From IMG/VR virus record IMGVR_UViG_3300043446_004613, positions 1 through 64,000 of that record: a stretch of 64,000 nucleotides of DNA, one strand, 5' to 3'. Of this stretch, positions 29,067 to 62,155 are shown piece by piece (position 1 is the first letter of the stretch; each line of letters starts with the position of its first letter). The translations under genes and the position numbers were made by a program. Under the pieces are notes generated by a model. The model saw nothing but the letters and a program-made list of their open reading frames with translations, searched no databases and was not told where the DNA came from.

Positions 29067-29537
29067 ATGGACACAGAAATTAACGTGGATGAGGTGATGC
29101 GCCTGCTTCGTGGCGGCGTCAAGGCTAAGAACACCAAAAAACGGTGGGAACGCATCTTTGAGATGTACCACGAGGGTAAGTCCTTCGAGGAGATCGCAGA
29201 ATGGTACGGGCGGAGTGAGTCGACTGTCCGTCGCCTGCTTAAACGGGCGGCGATTGAGCGTGCCAAACAGCCCGGATTCGCATGGCCGATCGATGCGTCT
29301 GGTCGTAAAATCTGCGACATCCCGCACCCAATGCCGTTAGGTCAACATCCCGGCGAGTGGGAACATCCACGTGCCCGTCCACTGCTCAGAAAGCGGTTTT
29401 TGAAGACATTTAATCCGAAGACGCGCTTGATTGAGCGTAGTAAGCCTAAAATAAAGCACATGTGGTGTCCGGTGTGCCGTCGCCCGTTTCAGCGTTCACT
29501 TACGTTGGCTGAAGTATTCTCGGCTGAAACGTCATGA
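29067..29537 (+). CDS. Sigma70 region-4-like HTH protein
   Basis: EGKSFEEIAEWYGRSESTVRRLLKRA; C-terminal CPVC. Confidence 0.7.
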   Translation: MDTEINVDEVMRLLRGGVKAKNTKKRWERIFEMYHEGKSFEEIAEWYGRSESTVRRLLKRAAIERAKQPGFAWPIDASGRKICDIPHPMPLGQHPGEWEHPRARPLLRKRFLKTFNPKTRLIERSKPKIKHMWCPVCRRPFQRSLTLAEVFSAETS

Positions 29538-29882
29538 AGACGGCGGCTGCCACTTTTCAATCTGCATGATGGCCGCGTTGTAGTCTTCATGGGTTCCTAC
29601 CCAGCGCCAGTACCACGTATCAGGGTAGGCGTAGCAGATGGCTCGATAGCGTCGACCGAGACGGATAGACCACCAGCTTTTAGCCCGAGTGAGCTTCTTA
29701 AACTCAAGGCTGGGATCGAAAGGATTGGCACGCCACTGGGCAAATACCTCACGGGCTAGGTTTTGCACATCGCTGGGCAGTTTTGACAGGAGCTTGTCAA
29801 ATTCGCGGCTGCGCTTGGAGGCTTTGCCTGCGACTACGACAGTGTCATCAAGAAGCAGGTTTACGATCAGGTTCGCGTTCAT
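29532..29882 (-). CDS. ParE/RelE-superfamily toxin-like protein with N-terminal tag
   Basis: F.KL...LP..VQ..A......NPF.PSL.FKKL...WSIR.G..YRA...WVGTHEDYN. Confidence 0.75.
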   Translation of the reverse strand: MNANLIVNLLLDDTVVVAGKASKRSREFDKLLSKLPSDVQNLAREVFAQWRANPFDPSLEFKKLTRAKSWWSIRLGRRYRAICYAYPDTWYWRWVGTHEDYNAAIMQIEKWQPPSS

Positions 29883-33506: not shown

Positions 33507-34220
33507 ATGCAGCTGAGCGAAGGTTTTAAGCAGCCAGAGAATTTTGACCCCGTAGCGGACGGTTCCGGGTGGGTCATGTATGCCGGTGCGAATGATTGGG
33601 AAGTCGGCACCACGGCAGTCAGCGTCATTTTTCCGAGCGACGAACAGAATCAGCGTGTCTGGATGACCGTCAAGCAGCGCTTCGACGGCGATGCCGAAGC
33701 ACCGGTTAAAGAGCATCCCGCGATCAAGGAGCATGGCGATAAGGCATGGCGTACGTGGAAGCGCGAAGCGATTGCCGCCTACCGTAACAAGAACAACGGG
33801 ACGCGCACATGGATGGACGCCTTCAAAGCGGCGTTGAAAACCAAGGCCATGAGTCCTTACGTCAAGGACTGGGGTATTGAGCGTACCAAGTGGGATAACG
33901 TCAAGGAGCACGCAGGGGTGATCGTCGCCAAGCTTTTGGAATCGGATGTCGATGATCCGTCGCCTAACCCCGACGAGATTGACCGACTTCTGCCGACCAA
34001 GACTTTCACCATGAAAGGCAGTAGCTTGCTGCATGCTCCCGGCCTGATTGATTTTGCCAAACGGCGCTGGCGCGAGCGCAGCCGTAAAGCTAAGCAGAAC
34101 GCGCTCGACATCTTGAAGGCATGGCAGCTACCACAAGAGGACGCCGAAGCGATTCTCAACGGAAAAGCAACGATAGAGACGCAAGGCGACGATGCCGTCG
34201 TGACCATTCAAAAGTATTAA
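33507..34220 (+). CDS. Two-cassette LLE-tagged protein
   Basis: Internal IVAKLLE|SDVDDPSPNPDEID; TACTTA at 33497-33502. Confidence 0.65.
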   Translation: MQLSEGFKQPENFDPVADGSGWVMYAGANDWEVGTTAVSVIFPSDEQNQRVWMTVKQRFDGDAEAPVKEHPAIKEHGDKAWRTWKREAIAAYRNKNNGTRTWMDAFKAALKTKAMSPYVKDWGIERTKWDNVKEHAGVIVAKLLESDVDDPSPNPDEIDRLLPTKTFTMKGSSLLHAPGLIDFAKRRWRERSRKAKQNALDILKAWQLPQEDAEAILNGKATIETQGDDAVVTIQKY

Positions 34221-52783: not shown

Positions 52784-53035
52784 GTGAACGCGACACCGCT
52801 TGATATGTTCAGAACCAAACCCGCCGTTGATACGGAGGATTTGGCCTTGTCGTTCATTGAGGAAGAAGTCGGACGTTTCGACTGGGTCAACAACTGGCCT
52901 AAGATAAAGGAGTCAGGTAATGCCCGCTGGCGCGTGCAGAACTGGCTGGACGCCTTGGGAGTCGAACACAGCGCCGACGAGATTGTTTCCTACTTGGATA
53001 AGCTCGTGGCCGAGCGGACAGGTCGTTGGCTCTGA
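52784..53035 (+). CDS. Hypothetical protein
   Basis: TAGTTA at 52774-52779. Confidence 0.55.
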   Translation: MNATPLDMFRTKPAVDTEDLALSFIEEEVGRFDWVNNWPKIKESGNARWRVQNWLDALGVEHSADEIVSYLDKLVAERTGRWL

Positions 53036-53058: not shown

Positions 53059-53514
53059 ATGACGAAAAGACTAACTCCGCTGGGGCTGGCGCTATTGCTG
53101 GCCGTAACCCTCGTTCCAATCACCGGCTGTGAAACCACACAAGACGCGGTTCAACGTGCGCAGATCATTGACGATACAGCCATTCTGTTGCGTAGCGCTG
53201 CTCGTAACGGCGCGATGCTGGCAATCGAAGATCACCCGGAATCAGCAAAGTACTTTGAACTGGCGCGTGCAGTCATTGCCGATTTTGCCACAGGCACGGA
53301 CTATTCACCTGATGCGTTCAAAGCGGCCATGCAGGCAAATATCAAGCAGTTGAACGACAAGTGGGTTAAGTTTGGCGTATACAACGTCACTGACTTGTAC
53401 GAGCTTTACTATGGTCGCTATGTGCGCGATCAGGTCAACGGTAACGTTGTCGCGAATAAATTCCTGAACGCTATTCAGGAAGGCTTTAAGCAGGCGCTAG
53501 AATCTAAGCCGTAA
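53059..53514 (+). CDS. Lipoprotein
   Basis: Signal peptide plus ITGC lipobox. Confidence 0.7.
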   Translation: MTKRLTPLGLALLLAVTLVPITGCETTQDAVQRAQIIDDTAILLRSAARNGAMLAIEDHPESAKYFELARAVIADFATGTDYSPDAFKAAMQANIKQLNDKWVKFGVYNVTDLYELYYGRYVRDQVNGNVVANKFLNAIQEGFKQALESKP

Positions 53515-53537: not shown

Positions 53538-54365
53538 CTAACTGCTGGCGCTTACAGGACGACAGCAGTTAGCGTCGATATGGTGGGAATCACTCACCAC
53601 TGTCCATTTTTTGTGGTCAATGATGTGCTTGATGTACGGTTGGTATTCTGCGCTTGGCCGATTGTTGTTTTTACCCTTGCACTGAATGATACCGCCATCG
53701 TGTACTTCGAGCGTCACGTGCGGTTTGTTGTGCAGGTCACGCAGGCTGTAGTAGTCGTAGTTTTCAGCCGTACGGAAGCGGTTAAAATAGGTGCCATTAC
53801 CGATGCAATGGTTCATAAGGCGACCTTCGCGCTCAAACTGAAGTGTGCTGACCAGCTTAACCCAGCTGATGTGATCGTCGTAGCGGAAAATCGTAACGGG
53901 CTTGTCGGTCACATAATTCCATACGTTTTCCGATACATCCTTATACCAGAGGATAGAAGCATCAACCGCAACAGGGAAAGCGATGCGGTCAAGACGGCGC
54001 AACCGTGTATCGGTCGGCTTTAAGCTGTTAAACCAGATGACGATAATGTCCAAGCACTGCCACAGGTTGCGGCGGCGAACTTGAATCGGGTCAAACCAGT
54101 ATATCAGCTGTCCGGCAGCGAGACTGCTTACTGCCCATGCAGGAAGACTAGCAGCAGGAAAGTATTTGTAGGCCGAGTCTTCTTTTTCAAAGCGCTCGTC
54201 GTCAGTCAACAGCCGGTAATTGGCGTTTACGTCCTTTTCCGGCAATTTGCTGATGATGTGATTACGTGCTACCGACATGACCCAGCGGCTGGCCGGTTCA
54301 TGTACGCAGCGGGCCGCGTAGCGGCGAAGTTCGCGTTCAATGTCAGCGACGTTGAGTACATTCAT
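53538..54365 (-). CDS. PcfJ-like domain protein
   Basis: EG..MNHCIG..Y, YSLRD...PHVTLE and QCKGKNN motifs. Confidence 0.8.
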   Translation of the reverse strand: MNVLNVADIERELRRYAARCVHEPASRWVMSVARNHIISKLPEKDVNANYRLLTDDERFEKEDSAYKYFPAASLPAWAVSSLAAGQLIYWFDPIQVRRRNLWQCLDIIVIWFNSLKPTDTRLRRLDRIAFPVAVDASILWYKDVSENVWNYVTDKPVTIFRYDDHISWVKLVSTLQFEREGRLMNHCIGNGTYFNRFRTAENYDYYSLRDLHNKPHVTLEVHDGGIIQCKGKNNNRPSAEYQPYIKHIIDHKKWTVVSDSHHIDANCCRPVSASS

Positions 54366-54372
54366 GCCGGAA

Positions 54373-54402
54373 TGTATACATTACGGCAGGCAGCCAGTTC
54401 AA
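54373..54402 (-). promoter_or_regulatory. Early-type promoter (variant)
   Basis: AAAATTTTACTTGAAC...TGTATACATT, 7 nt before ATG 54365. Confidence 0.5.
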
Positions 54403-54434
54403 GTAAAATTTTATGATGACTGTTAAAAACGTGT

Positions 54435-55691
54435 CTACGCAGGCTGAGGCTGACCGATAACGCCACGCAAACGAGCTTCACCTTGATTACCGTTACGATA
54501 TGCCTGAACAGCGCGGGCAAGTTCGCTGCTGCCGCGTTTAAGCAATTCCATAGGGAAACGCTGCGCATCAGCAAAAAGAGGCGCGACATTGCGGGCTTCT
54601 TCCGCAGTGATCTGGCTGTTGTAAGGATTGCGCACCTGTCCTGACTCGAAATGCGCCAGCACATAGGGACGGTCGTTTCGATCGGCAAAATAAAGTGGGC
54701 CTTGGTTTGCGTAAGTGTCCGCATGGCTACCTTTAGTACACCAAGTAGGCCAGTACCCTTCACCGTTTTCAGCGGGTGTTAGATTGCCCATTCGCCACAA
54801 CGCAGCGTCAACAGCACGACGGCTGAACGCTTTGACTGTTTCCGGGAAAATGGTTTTGCGCAACGTATATTCGCCATGCTGTGCAATCGTCTTGCCGTCT
54901 TTGGTGAACACCCACGGCTTTTCTTTCACTTCAACCGTGAAGTCAGCTGACTTTTTAAGGACGTCACGGAAACCGGCAACATCGTCGGCTTTCATGCCTT
55001 TGAGGCGGTCAAGCAGAGCATCCGCTTCCTGACCGTTGATGATCTCAACCTGCTCTTCACGGTTCATGGTCGCCATGTTCTTGTTGCGGTTGTTCTGATA
55101 GAAATTTGACAACACCGCCTGATAATTCAGGAAATTAACGACATTGTTTAGCCTAATGAAAAGCTCACGGCGGCGTGTTTGGATTGGATCAAAATGATGC
55201 AGTTCCTTCTCGTCGTTTCCTGCTGCCGTCATCCACGGCTGGAGTTCGCTCTTGGTCGGCGGTTCGCCAAAAGCACGCTTGGCTTTAGCCTTGGTCGGCT
55301 TGAATTTTTGGAACGACTGCTCGATGTCTTTCTGCACGACTGGCTCGTGCAGCGCCGTCGTGTAAGTGCGCTTCTCAGGATCGTACTCTTCGCGCACAGG
55401 CAGCGGGCTTTTCGGTGATTCAGATTCCGGCTTTCCGTGCGCCATCCAACCGCCCTTCGGAGAGTAGTAATACTTGCTTGAACCATGAGGGCGAGGCTCG
55501 GCTTTCGCCACATACGGTTCTTTAAGGAGACGGTCAATGTTTACAAGAAAATAGCGGGGTACGCGCTTGAACCATCCCTGAGCGCGTGGGTCGCTGAGCT
55601 TGGCAGCAAGCTTGTTGATCTCGTTATCAATGTCTTTGACGTTGATCACGTTCAATTCCAGCAGCAAATCGACAAGTATATTAGCGTTCAC
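54435..55691 (-). CDS. LLE-tagged paralog of the PcfJ-like protein
   Basis: Start reassigned to GTG 55691 (MNANILVDLLLE), TAGTTA 4 nt upstream; shares NV.DI..E and FDPIQ.RRR.L; TWCT..Y..QGPLY. Confidence 0.7.
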   Translation of the reverse strand: MNANILVDLLLELNVINVKDIDNEINKLAAKLSDPRAQGWFKRVPRYFLVNIDRLLKEPYVAKAEPRPHGSSKYYYSPKGGWMAHGKPESESPKSPLPVREEYDPEKRTYTTALHEPVVQKDIEQSFQKFKPTKAKAKRAFGEPPTKSELQPWMTAAGNDEKELHHFDPIQTRRRELFIRLNNVVNFLNYQAVLSNFYQNNRNKNMATMNREEQVEIINGQEADALLDRLKGMKADDVAGFRDVLKKSADFTVEVKEKPWVFTKDGKTIAQHGEYTLRKTIFPETVKAFSRRAVDAALWRMGNLTPAENGEGYWPTWCTKGSHADTYANQGPLYFADRNDRPYVLAHFESGQVRNPYNSQITAEEARNVAPLFADAQRFPMELLKRGSSELARAVQAYRNGNQGEARLRGVIGQPQPA

Positions 55692-55706
55692 GCAGTAACT
55701 ACTGAT

Positions 55707-56165
55707 ATGATTGATAGTTCCACGTTTGATGCTCGGTTGAATACCTGCCGGGCCTGTGAATTTTGGCGCGGGGTATGCGTAAAAGGGCACGCTTTGCGGG
55801 GCGACCTAGGCTGTCCCGACAAGAAGTTTGAGGGCATAAATGGTGCCGGTTACGTAGTAAGCCTGCCTTTTGCAGAACGGCAGCTACCGGCAGTAAGCGC
55901 GTCAGGCTGCTGCGGTTCGGTAGCGGAGCAGGAGATAAAACCAATGTCGTGGCGACAGGTTTGGGATCATTTTACAGCGTCGATGAAGACGTGGTCAGCT
56001 TCTGGGTTTGAGCTTGCCGACAATAGCTTGTATCTGCACCGCTTGAGCGTTTGCCACAACTGTCCTAAAAGCCAGTACCAGTGGTATCAATGTCGTCAGT
56101 GTAAATGCCTTGTTTACACAAAAACAAAGTTGAGTACAGAAAGCTGCCCGCTTGGTTTCTGGTAG
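55707..56165 (+). CDS. Cys-rich protein with two metal-binding modules (DUF6171-like)
   Basis: R...C..C...C..C.C....K......CP...W. Confidence 0.65.
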   Translation: MIDSSTFDARLNTCRACEFWRGVCVKGHALRGDLGCPDKKFEGINGAGYVVSLPFAERQLPAVSASGCCGSVAEQEIKPMSWRQVWDHFTASMKTWSASGFELADNSLYLHRLSVCHNCPKSQYQWYQCRQCKCLVYTKTKLSTESCPLGFW

Positions 56166-56173
56166 TTAAAAGC

Positions 56174-56533
56174 ATGAAGTTTTACACATTTGCTGCTGTC
56201 ATCGCCGCGCTCGTTGTAGCGGCCATCTATTCCCACAACTGGGACTTGGCTATCAGCATCGTAACGCCAGTCATCGTTACGTCTATCGCGAAATACATCC
56301 CAAAACTTCCTAAATGGGCGCTTCCCGTGAGCACGCCGCTGATCGGAATGGTGCTCGGTATCGTGCTGGATAAGCTCGGAGCAGCTAGTCTCAGCTGGTT
56401 CGATACCGCCAAAGCTGGTGCGCTGGCGGTTTTTATACGTGAATCTTGGAACCAAGCTGTCACAAAGCAGATGGCTGAGCCTGACGCGCCTGCCCAAGTT
56501 CCCACCGTCACTTCGTCAGGTAGCAACGGCTGA
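56174..56533 (+). CDS. Multi-TM membrane protein, holin-like
   Basis: 3-4 hydrophobic segments; TAGTTA at 56163-56168. Confidence 0.55.
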   Translation: MKFYTFAAVIAALVVAAIYSHNWDLAISIVTPVIVTSIAKYIPKLPKWALPVSTPLIGMVLGIVLDKLGAASLSWFDTAKAGALAVFIRESWNQAVTKQMAEPDAPAQVPTVTSSGSNG

Positions 56534-57166
56534 AGTCAATATGCCATTGATAAACGTAAGCTGGTAGTGGGTTTGGCCGTTACGCGAATCACCGGCCCAA
56601 ACTGTGTATGTTCCGCTGAGGCCTATGCTCAATCTATTCATGGCTTGTTGAGCTACAGAACCAGCAGAAGTTGCAGTTACCTGTGCTTGTTGAGCTAAAT
56701 TCGTACCGGTAACAGCAATCTCATAAGCGGACTGAGCTAAATTCGTACCGGTAACAGCAATCTCATAAGCGGACTGAGCTAAATTCGTACCGGTAACAGC
56801 AATCTCATAAGCGGACTGAGCTAAATTCGTACCGGTAACAGCAATCTCATAAGCGGACTGAGCTAAATTCGTACCGGTAACAGCCAGTTCGTAGGCCAAG
56901 TCAGCGGTTGTTGTTCCGTTACTATCGCACGACGAGTACTCGTAAAGCAGCGACAGGATCGACCACTTGGATGACGTCTGCGGATTCTCGTTGGTGTTGT
57001 CTACAACGCAGATGTACATGGCACTACCGTAAGTGACAACGTCCATCTGGGATGCGCTGTATGCGGTAGAACCTGACCAAAGGCCGGTGTAGTTGTAATC
57101 ACCGACGTTGTCGACGTAACGCGTGGTCTTACTCGCGTCTGCAAAGCTGTATACACAGATGTTCAT
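56516..57166 (-). CDS. Fibre-like protein: CBM5/12-like domain plus 14-aa coiled repeats
   Basis: W...TAY....V.Y....Y.C......P.....W; (LAQSAYEIAVTGTN)n; FINGIL C-terminus. Confidence 0.65.
   Translation of the reverse strand: MNICVYSFADASKTTRYVDNVGDYNYTGLWSGSTAYSASQMDVVTYGSAMYICVVDNTNENPQTSSKWSILSLLYEYSSCDSNGTTTADLAYELAVTGTNLAQSAYEIAVTGTNLAQSAYEIAVTGTNLAQSAYEIAVTGTNLAQSAYEIAVTGTNLAQQAQVTATSAGSVAQQAMNRLSIGLSGTYTVWAGDSRNGQTHYQLTFINGILTSAVAT
56691..56884. repeat. 42-bp perfect tandem repeat, about 4.6 copies
   Basis: Unit tgagctaaattcgtaccggtaacagcaatctcataagcggac. Confidence 0.95.
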
Positions 57167-58161: not shown

Positions 58162-58578
58162 ATGAAACGCGTGTACACAGACAATCGGATGCCCGGTGTT
58201 GAGATCGTGAACCACGGAAAGGCCGTGTTTGAGGTCTATAAAGACAACCGACTCCACTCAGCTTTTGACTCGTATGAGCGCCCAGACGGCACGGTAACCG
58301 AAGAGTTTGCTTTCCGCCGTGCGACCAAATGGTTTGACCGTGTCTGTGAAACCGGCGAATTCAAGCGTGTTCAGATTCCAGACGATCTGGATCATACGGA
58401 TATTCTCAACTCAGCTGAGAAGGCTACTTCTCGTCAGATTGACGCGCTCATGGCGCAGGAAAAAGCTGAAACCGATCCCAACCGGAAAAGTCAGCTGCGG
58501 AAACGCTTATTGCAGATGATGGCGCAAGAAGAGTCATTGGCTGAATCCGTCGTCAGCCATCTACTCGAAGAGCGCTGA
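58162..58578 (+). CDS. Protein with C-terminal LLE tag
   Basis: Ends LAE|SVVSHLLEER. Confidence 0.6.
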   Translation: MKRVYTDNRMPGVEIVNHGKAVFEVYKDNRLHSAFDSYERPDGTVTEEFAFRRATKWFDRVCETGEFKRVQIPDDLDHTDILNSAEKATSRQIDALMAQEKAETDPNRKSQLRKRLLQMMAQEESLAESVVSHLLEER

Positions 58579-61024: not shown

Positions 61025-61321
61025 TTAATTATCCTCAAGCAGCACAGCAACAATCGACTGGGCGGACTCGCGCATGGACTTTTCACCACGACACTTCCAC
61101 TTCTTACGGGAAAGTGCGTTGGGGCTGTTGGGATCGTTGCGCCAGTTGCCCTTGATGTGTGCGGAGCGTGCGCAGTAGGCGTCACCCTTGCTCGTGCCGG
61201 GACGGATGCGGTCGCCGCCGTCCTTGGCCTTACCAGCCTGTCCGTAGCGGACAGTCTTAGTGCGACCTGTTTCCGGGTTTTTGACGACTTTCTTAAAACG
61301 TTTTTTGACGGTGTCAGCCAT
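61025..61321 (-). CDS. DUF6321-like basic protein with C-terminal LLE tag
   Basis: KTVRYGQAG...YCARS...SRKKWKC; ends MRE|SAQSIVAVLLEDN; TAGTTA upstream. Confidence 0.65.
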   Translation of the reverse strand: MADTVKKRFKKVVKNPETGRTKTVRYGQAGKAKDGGDRIRPGTSKGDAYCARSAHIKGNWRNDPNSPNALSRKKWKCRGEKSMRESAQSIVAVLLEDN

Positions 61322-61327
61322 AGCGCT

Positions 61328-62155
61328 CTAACTACGTATGGCCGATAATATTTTAATCACCCGGTCGATAATGTCCGCATCACCCGAGGTGGCGTAATCA
61401 TCTGCGTAGAGGACGTCGCAGATACGGTTATAGGCTGCCGTGGTCAGGCGACGCTCACCGTTTCGAGCAGGATATTCCGGCGAATTGGTGTAGTACTCCA
61501 GTTCGCGCAGGCGCTCGGCAATACGGCCCAGTCCGGCGACAGCATCGTCACGTCGATCGAGCGTGGATTGCCGACTTAAACGGCGCAGCTTTCGGGCAAT
61601 GACTTTCAAAAGCTGGATTATTTCCTGCCGAGCTTCGGCGTTATTCAGCGCTATTGCGTTCCAGCTTTCCGCGTTTCTTTTGGCTACGGAATCAGCAAAG
61701 TCACTTACGTAGTTCTCAGCGTCCACTTCATCTTCCAACAAGGTATTAGCCAATGACTCGACGTTGAAACGTTTACGTATGCCAGAAACGTGCTCCTGCT
61801 CTTTGGCAATCTCCATATCGCGACGCTCCGCGTATTTTTGGGCTAAGCGCTGGATAGCGGTTTTTATCGTAGCCTGTATACCGGCGGGCAGCTTGGCGGC
61901 ATGCAGCTTGCCGCCGATAAGACCGACGAAAGCTTCGTAAGCTTGCTCCGGCTCCAGTTCAAGGATGCGTTCAACAGTGGCCGGTTTAACTTCGACCTGC
62001 TTGCTTCCGAGATAGTTGTACAGCGCCTGTAGCACATTATCCGGGCGATCATCACGATCCAGCGCCTGTTTGAGCGCAAGGTACTGTGGCGTCCAAATAC
62101 CTGTTGGATTTGTCGGGCCGGACAAATCGCTAAAATTGGCAGCAAAAGCTTTCAT
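61328..62155 (-). CDS. Two-cassette LLE-tagged protein
   Basis: NVE|SLANTLLE|DEVDAENYVSD; TAGTTA at 62162-62167. Confidence 0.65.
   Translation of the reverse strand: MKAFAANFSDLSGPTNPTGIWTPQYLALKQALDRDDRPDNVLQALYNYLGSKQVEVKPATVERILELEPEQAYEAFVGLIGGKLHAAKLPAGIQATIKTAIQRLAQKYAERRDMEIAKEQEHVSGIRKRFNVESLANTLLEDEVDAENYVSDFADSVAKRNAESWNAIALNNAEARQEIIQLLKVIARKLRRLSRQSTLDRRDDAVAGLGRIAERLRELEYYTNSPEYPARNGERRLTTAAYNRICDVLYADDYATSGDADIIDRVIKILSAIRS

What the first reader, a model, noticed from the sequence alone, without database searches (positions are those of the whole stretch)
53538..55701. Natural control: PcfJ-like paralog pair, one early and untagged, one late and tagged
Seen: the adjacent genes share NV(L/I)NVxDIxxE and FDPIQxRRRxL. 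The 54365 copy follows a TGTATACA early-type promoter and starts directly at the shared domain. The 55691 copy follows TAGTTA and has MNANILVDLLLE prepended. Inference: duplication plus acquisition of tag and late promoter converted an early protein into a virion-delivered version, showing how cargo is recruited.
Basis: partly seen in the sequence, partly recalled or inferred. Interest (0 to 1): 0.62.

Follow-up and report, generated by a model that had tools for sequence, protein, structure and literature searches.

The report
Tagged and untagged phage paralog pair
Two neighbouring, related genes of an uncultivated freshwater giant phage differ by a conserved 12-residue N-terminal peptide that about twenty other proteins of the phage also carry and that looks like the capsid-loading tag of phage T4, so the pair is a natural with-tag/without-tag comparison, though packaging has not been shown.

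Summary
The window is the first 64 kb of a 211-kb freshwater phage record. Genes 53538-54365 (275 aa) and 54435-55691 (418 aa), both on the minus strand, are full-length paralogs (profile-profile Prob 99.8%, E 9e-29). The alignment starts at residue 1 of the short copy and residue 13 of the long copy. The extra 12 residues (MNANILVDLLLE) are translated and conserved in about 60 homologs. The short family starts directly at MNVLNV.

The same peptide type (hydrophobic pair, two residues, L-L-E, with Glu at residue 10-14) heads at least 20 other proteins of this genome. The genome also encodes a T4 gp21-type prohead protease, a gp23-type capsid protein and a T4-type portal. My best reading is a T4-like capsid targeting sequence, cut after Glu12. 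That cut would leave a mature end matching the untagged paralog. This is inferred, not shown.

TAGTTA is a real motif lying 4-9 nt before about 45 starts, including sheath, portal and baseplate genes. The upstream signals of both genes are conserved in seven relatives. The labels "early" and "late", the direction of evolution and virion delivery all remain untested. The fold of the PcfJ domain resembles GNAT acyltransferases only weakly.

The parts
53538..54365 (-). Short, untagged PcfJ-like gene (275 aa, P0001). An in-frame TAA lies five codons upstream of the ATG, so no N-terminal extension is possible.
   Evidence: 80 homologs, nearly all starting MNVLNV
53640..53873 (-). Pfam PcfJ (PF14284) match in the short copy, aa 165-242. 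It lies within a C-terminal domain (about aa 150-272) whose model resembles the GNAT fold.
   Evidence: E 3.7e-8, 33.7 bits against a cut-off of 25
54024..54365 (-). N-terminal domain of the short copy (aa 1-114), shared with the long copy. It carries NVLNVADIERE and FDPIQVRRRNL.
   Evidence: N-terminal halves: Prob 99.7%, E 6e-27
54373..54380 (.). Palindrome TGTATACA, 7 nt before the short gene's ATG. It is a -10-like element of the genome's sigma-70-like promoter class.
54397..54402 (-). TTGAAC, a -35-like hexamer lying 16 nt upstream of TGTATACA. The canonical class has TTGACG at 13 nt, so this is an off-consensus member.
54404..54414 (-). AT-rich block ATAAAATTTTA just upstream of the -35-like hexamer (UP-element-like). 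It is conserved in relatives directly after the long gene's stop codon.
   Evidence: The consensus scan instead reads TAGACA-18-TAAAAT at 54437-54408.
54435..55691 (-). Long, tagged paralog (418 aa from GTG 55691, P0002).
   Evidence: AlphaFold model with pLDDT 83.8
55656..55691 (-). The tag: codons 1-12, MNANILVDLLLE, ending in L-L-E. It has no counterpart in the short family. In the model it has low confidence and forms a detached helix.
55122..55655 (-). N-terminal domain of the long copy (aa 13-190), homologous to aa 1-114 of the short copy, with a conserved insertion of about 65 residues (about aa 52-118).
54492..54974 (-). Diverged PcfJ-like C-terminal region of the long copy (about aa 240-400). 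Pfam gives no hit, but it aligns to the short family's PcfJ region.
   Evidence: Prob 95.8%, E 7e-9; cross controls below 1%; some long-family members keep a Pfam PcfJ hit
55696..55701 (-). TAGTTA, 4 nt before the long gene's GTG. It is one of about 45 such pre-start sites in the genome.
   Evidence: TAGTTA or TATTTA is conserved in all 7 relatives
55707..56165 (+). Divergent neighbour (DUF6171, 152 aa). Its ATG lies only 15 nt from the long gene's GTG, which limits how far the long gene could extend upstream.
   Evidence: the arrangement is conserved (the 'caatcat' string)

Best explanation
The two genes are ancient full-length paralogs of a PcfJ-like protein. Each has an N-terminal helical domain and a C-terminal domain with a GNAT-like fold. 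The pair is kept side by side throughout a clade of 200-250 kb freshwater myophages with T4-type heads.

The long copy carries a 12-residue N-terminal peptide that belongs to a family of terminal tags found on about 20 proteins of this phage. I propose that this peptide works like the T4 capsid targeting sequence. It would dock the protein into the assembling prohead core. The gp21-type prohead protease would then cut it off after Glu12 (L-L-E). The mature protein would begin at L13-N-V-I-N-V, the same point where the untagged paralog begins, and would be carried in the head and released into the next host with the DNA. The untagged copy has its own sigma-70-like promoter directly after the long gene's stop codon and would stay in the infected cell.

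Shown: the paralogy, the translated and conserved tag, the tag family, the presence of the T4-type protease, capsid and portal genes, and the different conserved upstream motifs.

Inferred: capsid targeting, cleavage, delivery, timing and biochemical activity.
For: Paralogy:
- Family profiles align with Prob 99.8%, E 9e-29, short residues 1-272 against long residues 13-401.
- The halves were tested separately, with negative cross controls.

The tag is real:
- About 60 long-family homologs start M-N-A-x-x-L-V-D-L-L-L-E, and about 75 short-family homologs start MNVLNV.
- The tag codons vary synonymously. Codon 13 is CTG or CTC in 5 of 8 genomes.

Tag family:
- In 22 proteins the motif places Glu at residue 10-14 from the Met.
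- N-terminal enrichment has odds ratio 10.6, P 3e-10.

T4-type head machinery:
- Peptidase_S77 (gp21-type), E 1.5e-19.
- Gp23-type capsid protein, E 7e-32.
- Portal_T4, E 1.5e-16.
- The capsid protein has AIMLE|N at about residue 73, where T4 gp23 loses its 65-residue N-terminal piece (PMC9958956).
- Tagged genes flank the protease-capsid module at 126396, 131524, 132003, 132599 and 133162.

Tagged proteins:
- They include a protein with a lysozyme domain and a 2H phosphoesterase.
- One is a small, very basic protein.

Association with the late-type motif:
- 19 of 23 tagged genes lie in gene runs headed by a TAGTTA-like motif and none in early-type runs (P 0.002).
- TAGTTA precedes sheath, portal, baseplate and fibre-like genes.

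Literature on T4:
- T4 capsid targeting sequences are 10-20 residue N-terminal peptides, sufficient for packaging, and cut after Glu. The gp21 cleavage logo is of the L-I-E type (PMC9026906, PMC5694885).
Against: - No virion proteome, RNA data or isolate exists. The sample is a freshwater metagenome with DNA runs only.
- The tag has no sequence similarity to the T4 tag MKTYQEFIAE beyond the hydrophobic-x-Glu ending.
- Two proteins carry the peptide at the C-terminus (58162-58578 and 61025-61321). Three have it internally. A cut after Glu would not remove a C-terminal tag.
- The AIMLE site in the capsid protein sits in a protein that is 73-96% identical throughout, so its conservation alone says little.
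- Structure prediction of the protease domain with the tag gave no answer.
- TAGTTA lies only 4-9 nt from start codons, and the genome hardly uses Shine-Dalgarno sites. It may therefore be a translation signal rather than a late promoter.
- No terminator lies between the two genes.
- The short gene's promoter is off-consensus in this genome (TTGAAC, 16-nt gap) and uses TGGTTCTA in relatives.
Confidence: 0.55

Rival explanations
1. The terminal peptide is a docking helix for some other common partner, not the prohead. The partner could be a phage or host chaperone, a membrane or compartment, or a polymerase or clamp. The tagged copy is then simply routed to that partner inside the infected cell.
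For: - The peptide occurs at either terminus and sometimes internally, as short linear docking motifs do.
- It is predicted as a free amphipathic helix followed by an acidic or proline-rich linker.
- Four tagged genes have no late-type motif in their gene run.
Against: - The Glu sits at residue 12-13 in most cases, and the ending is the hydrophobic-x-Glu type used by gp21-family proteases (PMC9026906).
- The genome encodes that protease.
- Tagged genes cluster around the head module and associate with the motif that precedes structural genes.
- T4 Alt also has a C-terminal propeptide cut by gp21 (PMC9026906), so a C-terminal position is not foreign to the capsid model.
Confidence: 0.2
2. TAGTTA is a translation-initiation signal that replaces the Shine-Dalgarno site, not a late promoter. 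The two paralogs are then co-transcribed, or otherwise not separated in time, and the only functional difference between them is the tag and their diverged sequence.
For: - TAGTTA lies 4-9 nt before ATG or GTG, where a ribosome-binding site would sit.
- No conserved base lies upstream of it apart from G at position -1.
- Shine-Dalgarno-like 4-mers precede only about 7% of starts, the random level.
- Many TAGTTA genes start with GTG.
- No terminator lies between the two genes.
Against: - The motif heads gene runs containing sheath, portal, baseplate and fibre-like genes. Most genes inside such runs lack it, which fits a promoter better.
- T4 late promoters are likewise a single short AT-rich element with no -35 (established knowledge of T4).
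- Back-to-back palindromic copies sit between divergent genes (87562/87565 and 103667/103670).
Confidence: 0.3
3. The N-terminal peptide is a propeptide that keeps the protein inactive or unstable until it is cut, or a degron. It has no role in targeting.
For: - It ends in a protease-type site.
- The tagged set includes potentially harmful activities: a lysozyme domain, a phosphoesterase, and a sequence that by eye looks RelE/ParE-like.
Against: - A free 12-residue helix with low model confidence, packed against nothing, is an unlikely inhibitor for 20 unrelated folds.
- The variant ending in Asp (29532-29882) and the C-terminal copies would not be cut. In T4, an Asp at that position blocks cutting but not targeting (PMC9026906).
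Confidence: 0.1
4. There is no tag. The long gene really starts at TTG 55655, giving MNVINV like its paralog, and the upstream codons are untranslated.
For: - TTG at 55655 is a possible start codon, and it would make the two N-termini parallel.
Against: - The equivalent codon is CTG or CTC in 5 of 8 genomes.
- Codons 3, 6, 9, 11 and 12 keep their residue through 2-4 different codons.
- About 60 independently called homologs start at the MNA codons.
- TAGTTA followed by 4 nt and a start codon is the commonest spacing in the genome.
- Glu at residue 12 fits the tag family.
Confidence: 0.02

Closest known systems
T4 capsid targeting sequence (the N-terminal propeptides of internal proteins IPI-III and Alt, cut by prohead protease gp21)
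   Same: - It is a short N-terminal peptide (10-20 residues in T4, 10-14 here), hydrophobic, and ends in hydrophobic-x-Glu.
- It is shared by otherwise unrelated proteins.
- The phage has a gp21-family protease, a gp23-family capsid protein and a T4-type portal.
- One tagged protein is small and very basic, like the T4 internal proteins.
- One variant ends in Asp. In T4, an Asp there still allows targeting but blocks cutting (PMC9026906).
   Different: - There is no sequence similarity to MKTYQEFIAE.
- About 20 carriers here, against a handful in T4.
- The peptide is also found at C-termini and internally.
- The protease is fused to a long C-terminal region rich in Lys and Glu.
- Packaging and cutting are untested here.
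Propeptides of ejection and inner-body proteins of giant phages phiKZ, 201phi2-1 and SPN3US
   Same: - Many head proteins in a large myophage are processed after Glu by a gp21-related protease.
- Diverged paralogs there share conserved N-termini, for example SPN3US gp53 and gp54 (PMC5694885).
   Different: - Those propeptides are mostly over 100 residues long, and their motif is (S/A/G)-x-Glu (PMC5694885). Here the peptide is 12-13 residues with L-L-Glu.
- The capsid protein here is nearest to T4-type capsid proteins at only 25-29% identity.
PcfJ-like proteins (Pfam PF14284), named after a gene of the Enterococcus conjugative plasmid pCF10
   Same: - The short copy passes the Pfam threshold.
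- Its nearest ESM Atlas clusters are PcfJ families from bacteria and phages.
   Different: - I found no function for PcfJ in the literature held here.
- The N-terminal domain shared by this pair is not part of the Pfam model.
- The long copy fails the Pfam model.
GNAT/MYST acyl-CoA N-acyltransferase fold
   Same: - All 50 best structural matches to the short copy's residues 150-272 are GNAT-type enzymes (Z 7.6-5.6, rmsd about 3 Å over about 100 residues).
- Foldseek probability reaches 0.97.
- A conserved Q-C-K-G-x-N sits at a strand-to-helix turn. From my own knowledge, not tested here, that is where GNATs have Q/R-x-x-G-x-G/A.
   Different: - The scores are below the level at which the tool trusts a match (Z under 8; Foldseek E 0.06).
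- Sequence identity is 3-14%.
- No sequence-profile hit to any solved structure was found.
- The long copy lacks the Gly of that motif.

Membership tests
PcfJ-like protein (PF14284) | Match to the Pfam model above its gathering score: short copy | tested here: met
   33.7 bits against a cut-off of 25, aa 165-242
PcfJ-like protein (PF14284) | Match to the Pfam model above its gathering score: long copy | tested here: not met
   No Pfam hit. Homology to the short family's PcfJ region appears only by profile-profile comparison (Prob 95.8%, E 7e-9). Some long-family relatives keep a Pfam hit.
T4-type capsid targeting sequence | Short (10-20 residue) N-terminal peptide shared by unrelated proteins of one phage | tested here: met
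   In 22 proteins the motif places Glu at residue 10-14. N-terminal enrichment P 3e-10.
T4-type capsid targeting sequence | Ends at a gp21-type site (hydrophobic-x-Glu, cut after Glu) | tested here: met
   L-L-E (or M-L-E, L-I-E, I-L-E) in every member by sequence. The cut itself was not tested.
T4-type capsid targeting sequence | The phage encodes a gp21-family prohead protease and a gp23-family capsid protein | tested here: met
   PF03420 at 67.1 bits against a cut-off of 27. PF07068 at 107 bits against a cut-off of 24.4.
T4-type capsid targeting sequence | The peptide is necessary and sufficient for incorporation into proheads and is absent from the mature virion protein | not testable with these tools
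   No isolate, proteome or RNA data exists. Complex prediction gave no answer.
T4-type capsid targeting sequence | Sequence similarity to the T4 peptide MKTYQEFIAE | tested here: not met
   By inspection of the aligned tags against the T4 peptide as printed in bioRxiv 10.1101/2021.01.19.427310. Only the hydrophobic-x-Glu ending is shared.
GNAT acyltransferase fold | Structural match of the domain to solved GNATs | tested here: inconclusive
   Z 7.6 at best. All 50 rows are GNAT-type, but the scores fall below the tool's trust level. Foldseek E 0.06.
GNAT acyltransferase fold | Acyl-CoA binding and transfer | not testable with these tools
The motif Q-C-K-G-x-N is only suggestive.
Sigma-70-type promoter (short gene) | A -35 and a -10 hexamer at 16-18 nt spacing | tested here: inconclusive
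   TTGAAC, then 16 nt, then TGTATACA. TATACA lacks the final T, so the consensus scan does not list it and instead lists TAGACA-18-TAAAAT at 54437-54408. The architecture is conserved in 7 relatives.

The most novel reading that the evidence does not exclude
The peptide of 12-13 residues (hydrophobic pair, two residues, L-L-E) is a portable capsid-loading tag used across a widespread clade of freshwater giant phages. It would pre-load twenty or more different proteins, among them a lysozyme-domain protein, a 2H phosphoesterase of the kind that degrades defence signals, and a PcfJ-like protein with an acyltransferase-like fold. These would arrive in the next host together with the DNA. The tagged/untagged paralog pair would record how a cytoplasmic protein and a delivered effector diverge from one gene. 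The phage would also run its genes from promoters placed directly at the start codons, with leaderless messages for both early and late classes.
Probability: 0.4. Interest if true: 0.72.

Novelty: new variant of a known kind. Interest (0 to 1): 0.58.

Why it matters
How phages choose which proteins travel inside the capsid is understood experimentally only for T4 and a few giant phages. Even in T4, how proteins are localised to the scaffolding core remains unknown (PMC9958956).

This case offers three things:
- a new, easily recognised tag with about 20 carriers;
- the matching protease in the same genome;
- a conserved pair of paralogs that differ by exactly the tag, at exactly the predicted cut.

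That gives clear, cheap predictions: which copy is in virions, and where its N-terminus lies. It also gives a rule for listing candidate delivered proteins in a large uncultivated phage clade. More than 240 capsid-protein homologs were found, and the 120 best listed are 73-96% identical.

The work also gives the first hint of a fold for the uncharacterised PcfJ domain.

The limit is that everything rests on sequence. There is no isolate.

Tried and rejected
- **Close relatives in GenBank phages and IMG/VR:** none found for either protein.
- **PHROGs for the long copy and for ten large window proteins:** almost nothing.
- **Profile comparison with the built-in tool:** it failed, so I ran hhalign in the Python box instead.
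- **Foldseek against PDB:** no match at E <= 0.001 for either model.
- **Profile search of solved structures with the short family:** no hit.
- **Complex prediction (protease domain residues 11-215 with residues 1-45 of the long copy):** no answer, score 0.00. This is evidence neither for nor against binding.
- **RNA evidence:** only two DNA runs of one freshwater sample hold the stretch, so I did not use read laying.
- **Whole-record search of the genome that holds the tagged single-copy homolog P0148:** the record is not held.
- **Literature on PcfJ:** the term is swamped by C. elegans plasmid names. One unrelated mention of 'PcfJ-like' and none of PF14284.
- **Alternative start at TTG 55655:** rejected.
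- **Longer ORF from GTG 55790:** rejected. It would overlap the divergent DUF6171 gene, is not conserved as protein, and the apparent S-S-Y conservation there is the TAGTTA motif read in frame.
- **Reading the AT-rich block as the -10 element (TAAAAT):** I considered this for the whole promoter class. No consistent -35 is found upstream of it in the other members, so I prefer the reading UP element, then -35, then TGTATACA.
- **The large representative-protein search:** not used, because the word search already found about 150 homologs.
Full report
**What the window is.**
The window is the first 64 kb of a 211,113-bp virus record. CheckV rates it 93% complete and its G+C is 52%. The only public runs that hold the stretch are two DNA runs of one freshwater metagenome. 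A simple gene call gives 261 genes covering 92% of the genome.

The phage is a myovirus with a T4-type head.
- Tail sheath: PHROG 23, E 2e-40.
- Baseplate wedge proteins.
- Portal_T4: E 1.5e-16.
- gp21-type prohead protease: PF03420, 67 bits, in ORF 127484-129178.
- gp23-type major capsid protein: PF07068, 107 bits, ORF 129216-130679.

The capsid protein is only 25-29% identical to any capsid protein in GenBank phages. It has more than 240 homologs in metagenomes. The 120 best listed are 73-96% identical, and many sit on contigs of 200-250 kb. This is therefore an uncultivated but widespread clade.

**Checking the observation.**
Both genes lie on the minus strand.
- The short gene runs 54365 to 53538 (275 aa) and starts MNVLNVADIERE.
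- The long gene, read from GTG 55691, runs to 54435 (418 aa) and starts MNANILVDLLLE, then LNVINVKDIDNE.
- Both contain FDPIQ-x-RRR-x-L.
- TGTATACA is at 54373-54380, 7 nt before the short gene's ATG.
- TAGTTA is at 55696-55701, 4 nt before the long gene's GTG.

**Are they paralogs?**
- BLASTP finds two collinear N-terminal segments (E 3e-5 and 1e-4).
- Within the phage's own proteome, each is the other's only hit.
- The word search found 70 homologs of the long protein and 80 of the short one. Most are 40-60% identical, and they often come from contigs of matching length.
- In eight further contigs that I fetched around a long-family gene, the long gene is followed directly by a gene of 266-289 aa on the same strand, the size of the short copy.

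Profiles of the two families align over the full length: Prob 99.8%, E 9e-29, short 1-272 against long 13-401. Tested separately, the N-terminal halves give E 6e-27 and the C-terminal halves Prob 95.8%, E 7e-9. The two cross comparisons give Prob below 1%.

So the pair is a full-length duplication. The long copy has acquired insertions (about aa 52-118, 190-240 and 300-315) and has drifted out of reach of the Pfam PcfJ model, which hits only the short copy. Some long-family relatives still carry a Pfam PcfJ hit.

**Is the 12-residue extension real?**
- About 60 long-family homologs, called independently, begin M-N-A-x-x-L-V-D-L-L-L-E-L-N-V-I-N-V.
- About 75 short-family homologs begin M-N-V-L-N-V.
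- Across eight genomes, tag codons 3, 6, 9, 11 and 12 keep their residue while using 2-4 different codons.
- Codon 13, a TTG in this genome and hence a conceivable start, is CTG or CTC in five of the eight.
- The short gene has an in-frame TAA five codons upstream of its ATG, so it cannot be extended.
- The longer ORF from GTG 55790 would overlap the divergent DUF6171 gene, whose ATG is at 55707. It shows no protein-level conservation beyond the TAGTTA motif read in frame.

The start at 55691 stands.

**The tag is a family.**
A search of all N-termini for a pattern taken from a few examples found the same kind of peptide on 22 proteins. The pattern is: Met, then 2-12 residues, a hydrophobic pair, two residues, then L/M, L/I/V and Glu. 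The Glu falls at residue 10-14, and an acidic or proline-rich stretch usually follows. Examples in the window start at 938, 19509, 19943, 23626, 38419 and 38449.

Using only the longest-ORF start, the pattern begins within residues 2-14 in 16 of 3,393 positions, against 27 of 60,492 positions elsewhere (odds ratio 10.6, P 3e-10). Many of the "elsewhere" cases lie just after a downstream start codon.

Exceptions to the N-terminal rule:
- Two proteins carry the peptide at their C-terminus (58162-58578 and 61025-61321). The second is a 98-aa, very basic protein.
- Three have it internally.
- One variant ends in Asp instead of Glu (29532-29882).

In the AlphaFold model of the long protein (pLDDT 83.8), residues 1-15 have confidence below 50 and form a free helix ahead of a well-modelled body.

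**What the tag most likely does.**
In T4, the internal proteins and Alt carry N-terminal peptides of 10-20 residues, the capsid targeting sequences.
- They are sufficient to load even foreign proteins into the prohead core.
- The gp21 protease removes them by cutting after Glu.
- In the ten-residue T4 tag, residues 4 and 7 matter for targeting and residues 8 and 10 for cutting.
- An Asp at position 10 blocks cutting but not targeting.
- Alt is also trimmed at its C-terminus (PMC9026906, PMC9958956, PMC5694885).

The phage here has the same protease family. Its tag ends in L-L-Glu, the T4 type of site. Its capsid protein has A-I-M-L-E|N at about residue 73, where T4 gp23 loses 65 residues, and the Pfam capsid domain begins near residue 93. 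Five tagged genes sit next to the protease-capsid module.

Tagged proteins include one with a C-terminal phage-lysozyme domain (109515-110867) and a 2H phosphoesterase with a faint Acb1 match (194163-195473). These are plausible cargo, since T4 is known to pack and inject proteins such as IPI with its genome (PMC9958956).

A cut after Glu12 of the long protein would leave L-N-V-I-N-V, exactly in register with the short copy's M-N-V-L-N-V. I therefore read the tag as a T4-like capsid targeting sequence.

This is inference. Nothing here shows packaging or cutting. The one structural test I could run, the protease domain together with the tag, gave no answer.

**The upstream signals.**

*TAGTTA.*
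- 37 of its 58 copies lie within 50 nt upstream of a called start (23-fold excess).
- In about 45 cases it sits 4-9 nt before an ATG or GTG, with G just before it and a preference for A-R-G-C after it. No other base upstream is conserved.
- It heads the genes for sheath, portal, a gp6-like baseplate protein, a fibre-like protein and a 2,127-aa protein.
- Related forms GTATTTA and GTAATTA occur in the same position.
- 19 of 23 tagged genes lie in same-strand runs whose nearest upstream signal is of this type, and none lie in early-type runs (P 0.002).
- In seven relatives, the long gene is preceded by TAGTTA (five) or TATTTA (two), 4-5 nt before its start.
- The distant tagged homolog P0148 has GTAATTA 6 nt before its ATG.

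*TGTATACA.*
- It occurs 40 times against about 3 expected.
- A dozen copies form a clear class: an AT-rich block, then TTGACG, 13 nt, TGTATACA, 8-11 nt and ATG.
- The short gene's copy is off-consensus (TTGAAC, 16-nt gap).
- In six of the seven relatives the same place holds an AT-rich block, TTGCG or TTGAC, 12-17 nt, then TGGTTCTA (once TAGTTCTC) and 6-7 nt to the start, directly after the long gene's stop. The seventh, L015, has a 500-nt spacer and a different proximal element.

So the two paralogs keep different signals across the clade. By analogy with T4 (established knowledge), early promoters have a -35 and late promoters are a single short AT-rich element. On that analogy, "early or middle" for the short gene and "late" for the long gene is reasonable.

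Three cautions apply.
1. Shine-Dalgarno-like words precede only about 7% of starts, the random level. Both motifs sit where a ribosome site would be. The messages would then be leaderless, or the motifs act in translation.
2. No terminator separates the two genes, so late read-through into the short gene is likely.
3. There are no RNA data.

**What the protein is.**
PcfJ has no known function in the literature I could search. The short copy's model is confident (pLDDT 94).
- Residues 150-272, which contain the Pfam match, resemble GNAT/MYST acyltransferases in every one of the 50 best rows of an exhaustive structural search (Z 7.6-5.6).
- The same fold type tops the Foldseek lists for both models.
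- These scores are below the tools' trust levels, and no sequence-profile link to a solved structure exists.
- The short family has invariant H-C-x-G-N-G, S-L-R-D and Q-C-K-G-x-x-N. The last sits at a strand-to-helix turn. From my own knowledge, not tested here, that is where GNATs bind the pyrophosphate of CoA.
- The long family keeps only the Cys, a Pro and the Gln.

I take this as a lead. The short copy may be an enzyme. The long copy may have a changed activity or none.

**Direction of evolution.**
In a tree rooted on two distant PcfJ-like proteins, the long family is one clade on a long stem (support 100). The short-type sequences form the rest. The tagged P0148 groups with the untagged, short-like P0146 and P0147 outside the long clade. 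However, the position of P0148 means the tag was gained or lost at least twice, and the root rests on a long branch. I leave the direction open.

**Verdict.**
- Shown: paralogy, the tag, the start and the distinct signals.
- Backed by several independent genomic features but unproven: the T4-like targeting logic.
- Untested: timing, delivery and the direction of evolution.

This is a new variant of a known kind of system. Its value is that the pair gives a sharp, testable prediction.

Noticed in passing
whole genome G000; in the window e.g. 928, 16685, 20341, 30595, 38436, 52774, 56163, 58151 (+) and 13823, 29062, 48766, 61334, 62167 (-): G-TAGTTA lies 4-9 nt before about 45 start codons (ATG or GTG), with nothing else conserved upstream. 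Shine-Dalgarno-like words precede only about 7% of starts, the random level. Either the messages are leaderless or this is a non-SD initiation signal.
   Followed up: partly
G000, 40 sites; 13 in the window (2528, 3424, 6704, 8413, 11250, 15875, 16595, 21369, 24576, 34249, 54373, 57148, 60989): The palindrome TGTATACA is about 15-fold over-represented. About a dozen copies are promoter-like (AT-rich block, TTGACG, 13 nt, motif, 8-11 nt, ATG). More than 20 lie inside genes and are unexplained; a dimeric regulator's site is one possibility.
   Followed up: partly
window 58162-58578 (+) and 61025-61321 (-): Two proteins carry the tag-like peptide at the C-terminus (ending ...VVSHLLEER and ...IVAVLLEDN). 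The second is a 98-aa protein rich in Lys and Arg, reminiscent of T4's small basic internal proteins.
   Followed up: partly
window 29532-29882 (-): A 116-aa protein starts MNANLIVNLLLD, a tag variant ending in Asp. By eye its C-terminal half looks like a RelE/ParE-type toxin; I ran no family search on it. In T4, an Asp at this position allows targeting but blocks cutting.
   Followed up: no
G000 109515-110867 (+) and 194163-195473 (+): Two tagged proteins have recognisable domains. One has a C-terminal phage lysozyme domain. The other is a 2H/LigT phosphoesterase with a faint match to the anti-CBASS protein Acb1.
   Followed up: partly
window 33507-34220 (+) at aa ~145; window 61328-62155 (-) at aa ~141; G000 85298-86014 (+) at aa ~182: Tag-like peptides followed by acidic stretches occur inside three proteins. 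They could be internal cleavage sites or mis-joined gene calls.
   Followed up: no
G000 87552/87571 and 103667-103685: Divergent gene pairs share a palindrome, TAACTACGTAGTTA, so two TAGTTA motifs sit back to back with under 20 nt between the two start codons.
   Followed up: no
G000 127484-129178 (+): The gp21-type protease domain occupies only the first 200 or so residues of a 564-aa ORF. The rest is rich in Lys and Glu and may be a fused scaffold.
   Followed up: no
loci L014 (1620-2771), L016 (1754-2842), L017 (1-187), L020 (1-765): Relatives encode a sigma-54 activator (Sigma54_activat, AAA lid and HTH_8 domains) about 1.2 kb upstream of the paralog pair. The gene calls around the pair in this window show none there.
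   Followed up: no
window 56516-57166 (-): A 216-aa protein holds five tandem copies of a 14-residue unit (AYEIAVTGTNLAQS).
   Followed up: no
proteins P0064, P0065, P0067; P0011, P0012, P0031, P0038, P0043, P0046-P0050: Some long-family homologs are 480-630 aa and carry an extra Pfam domain, either a DnaJ-type CXXCXGXG zinc finger or a Pfam-detectable PcfJ domain. The family's C-terminal architecture therefore varies.
   Followed up: no
window 52784-53035 (+), 53059-53514 (+), 56174-56533 (+): The genes around the pair look like late or lysis functions. One has a lipoprotein signal with Cys (53059), one is a small membrane protein (56174), and a holin family gene sits at the equivalent place in relative L022. 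The short gene's own promoter therefore sits inside a late-looking region.
   Followed up: no
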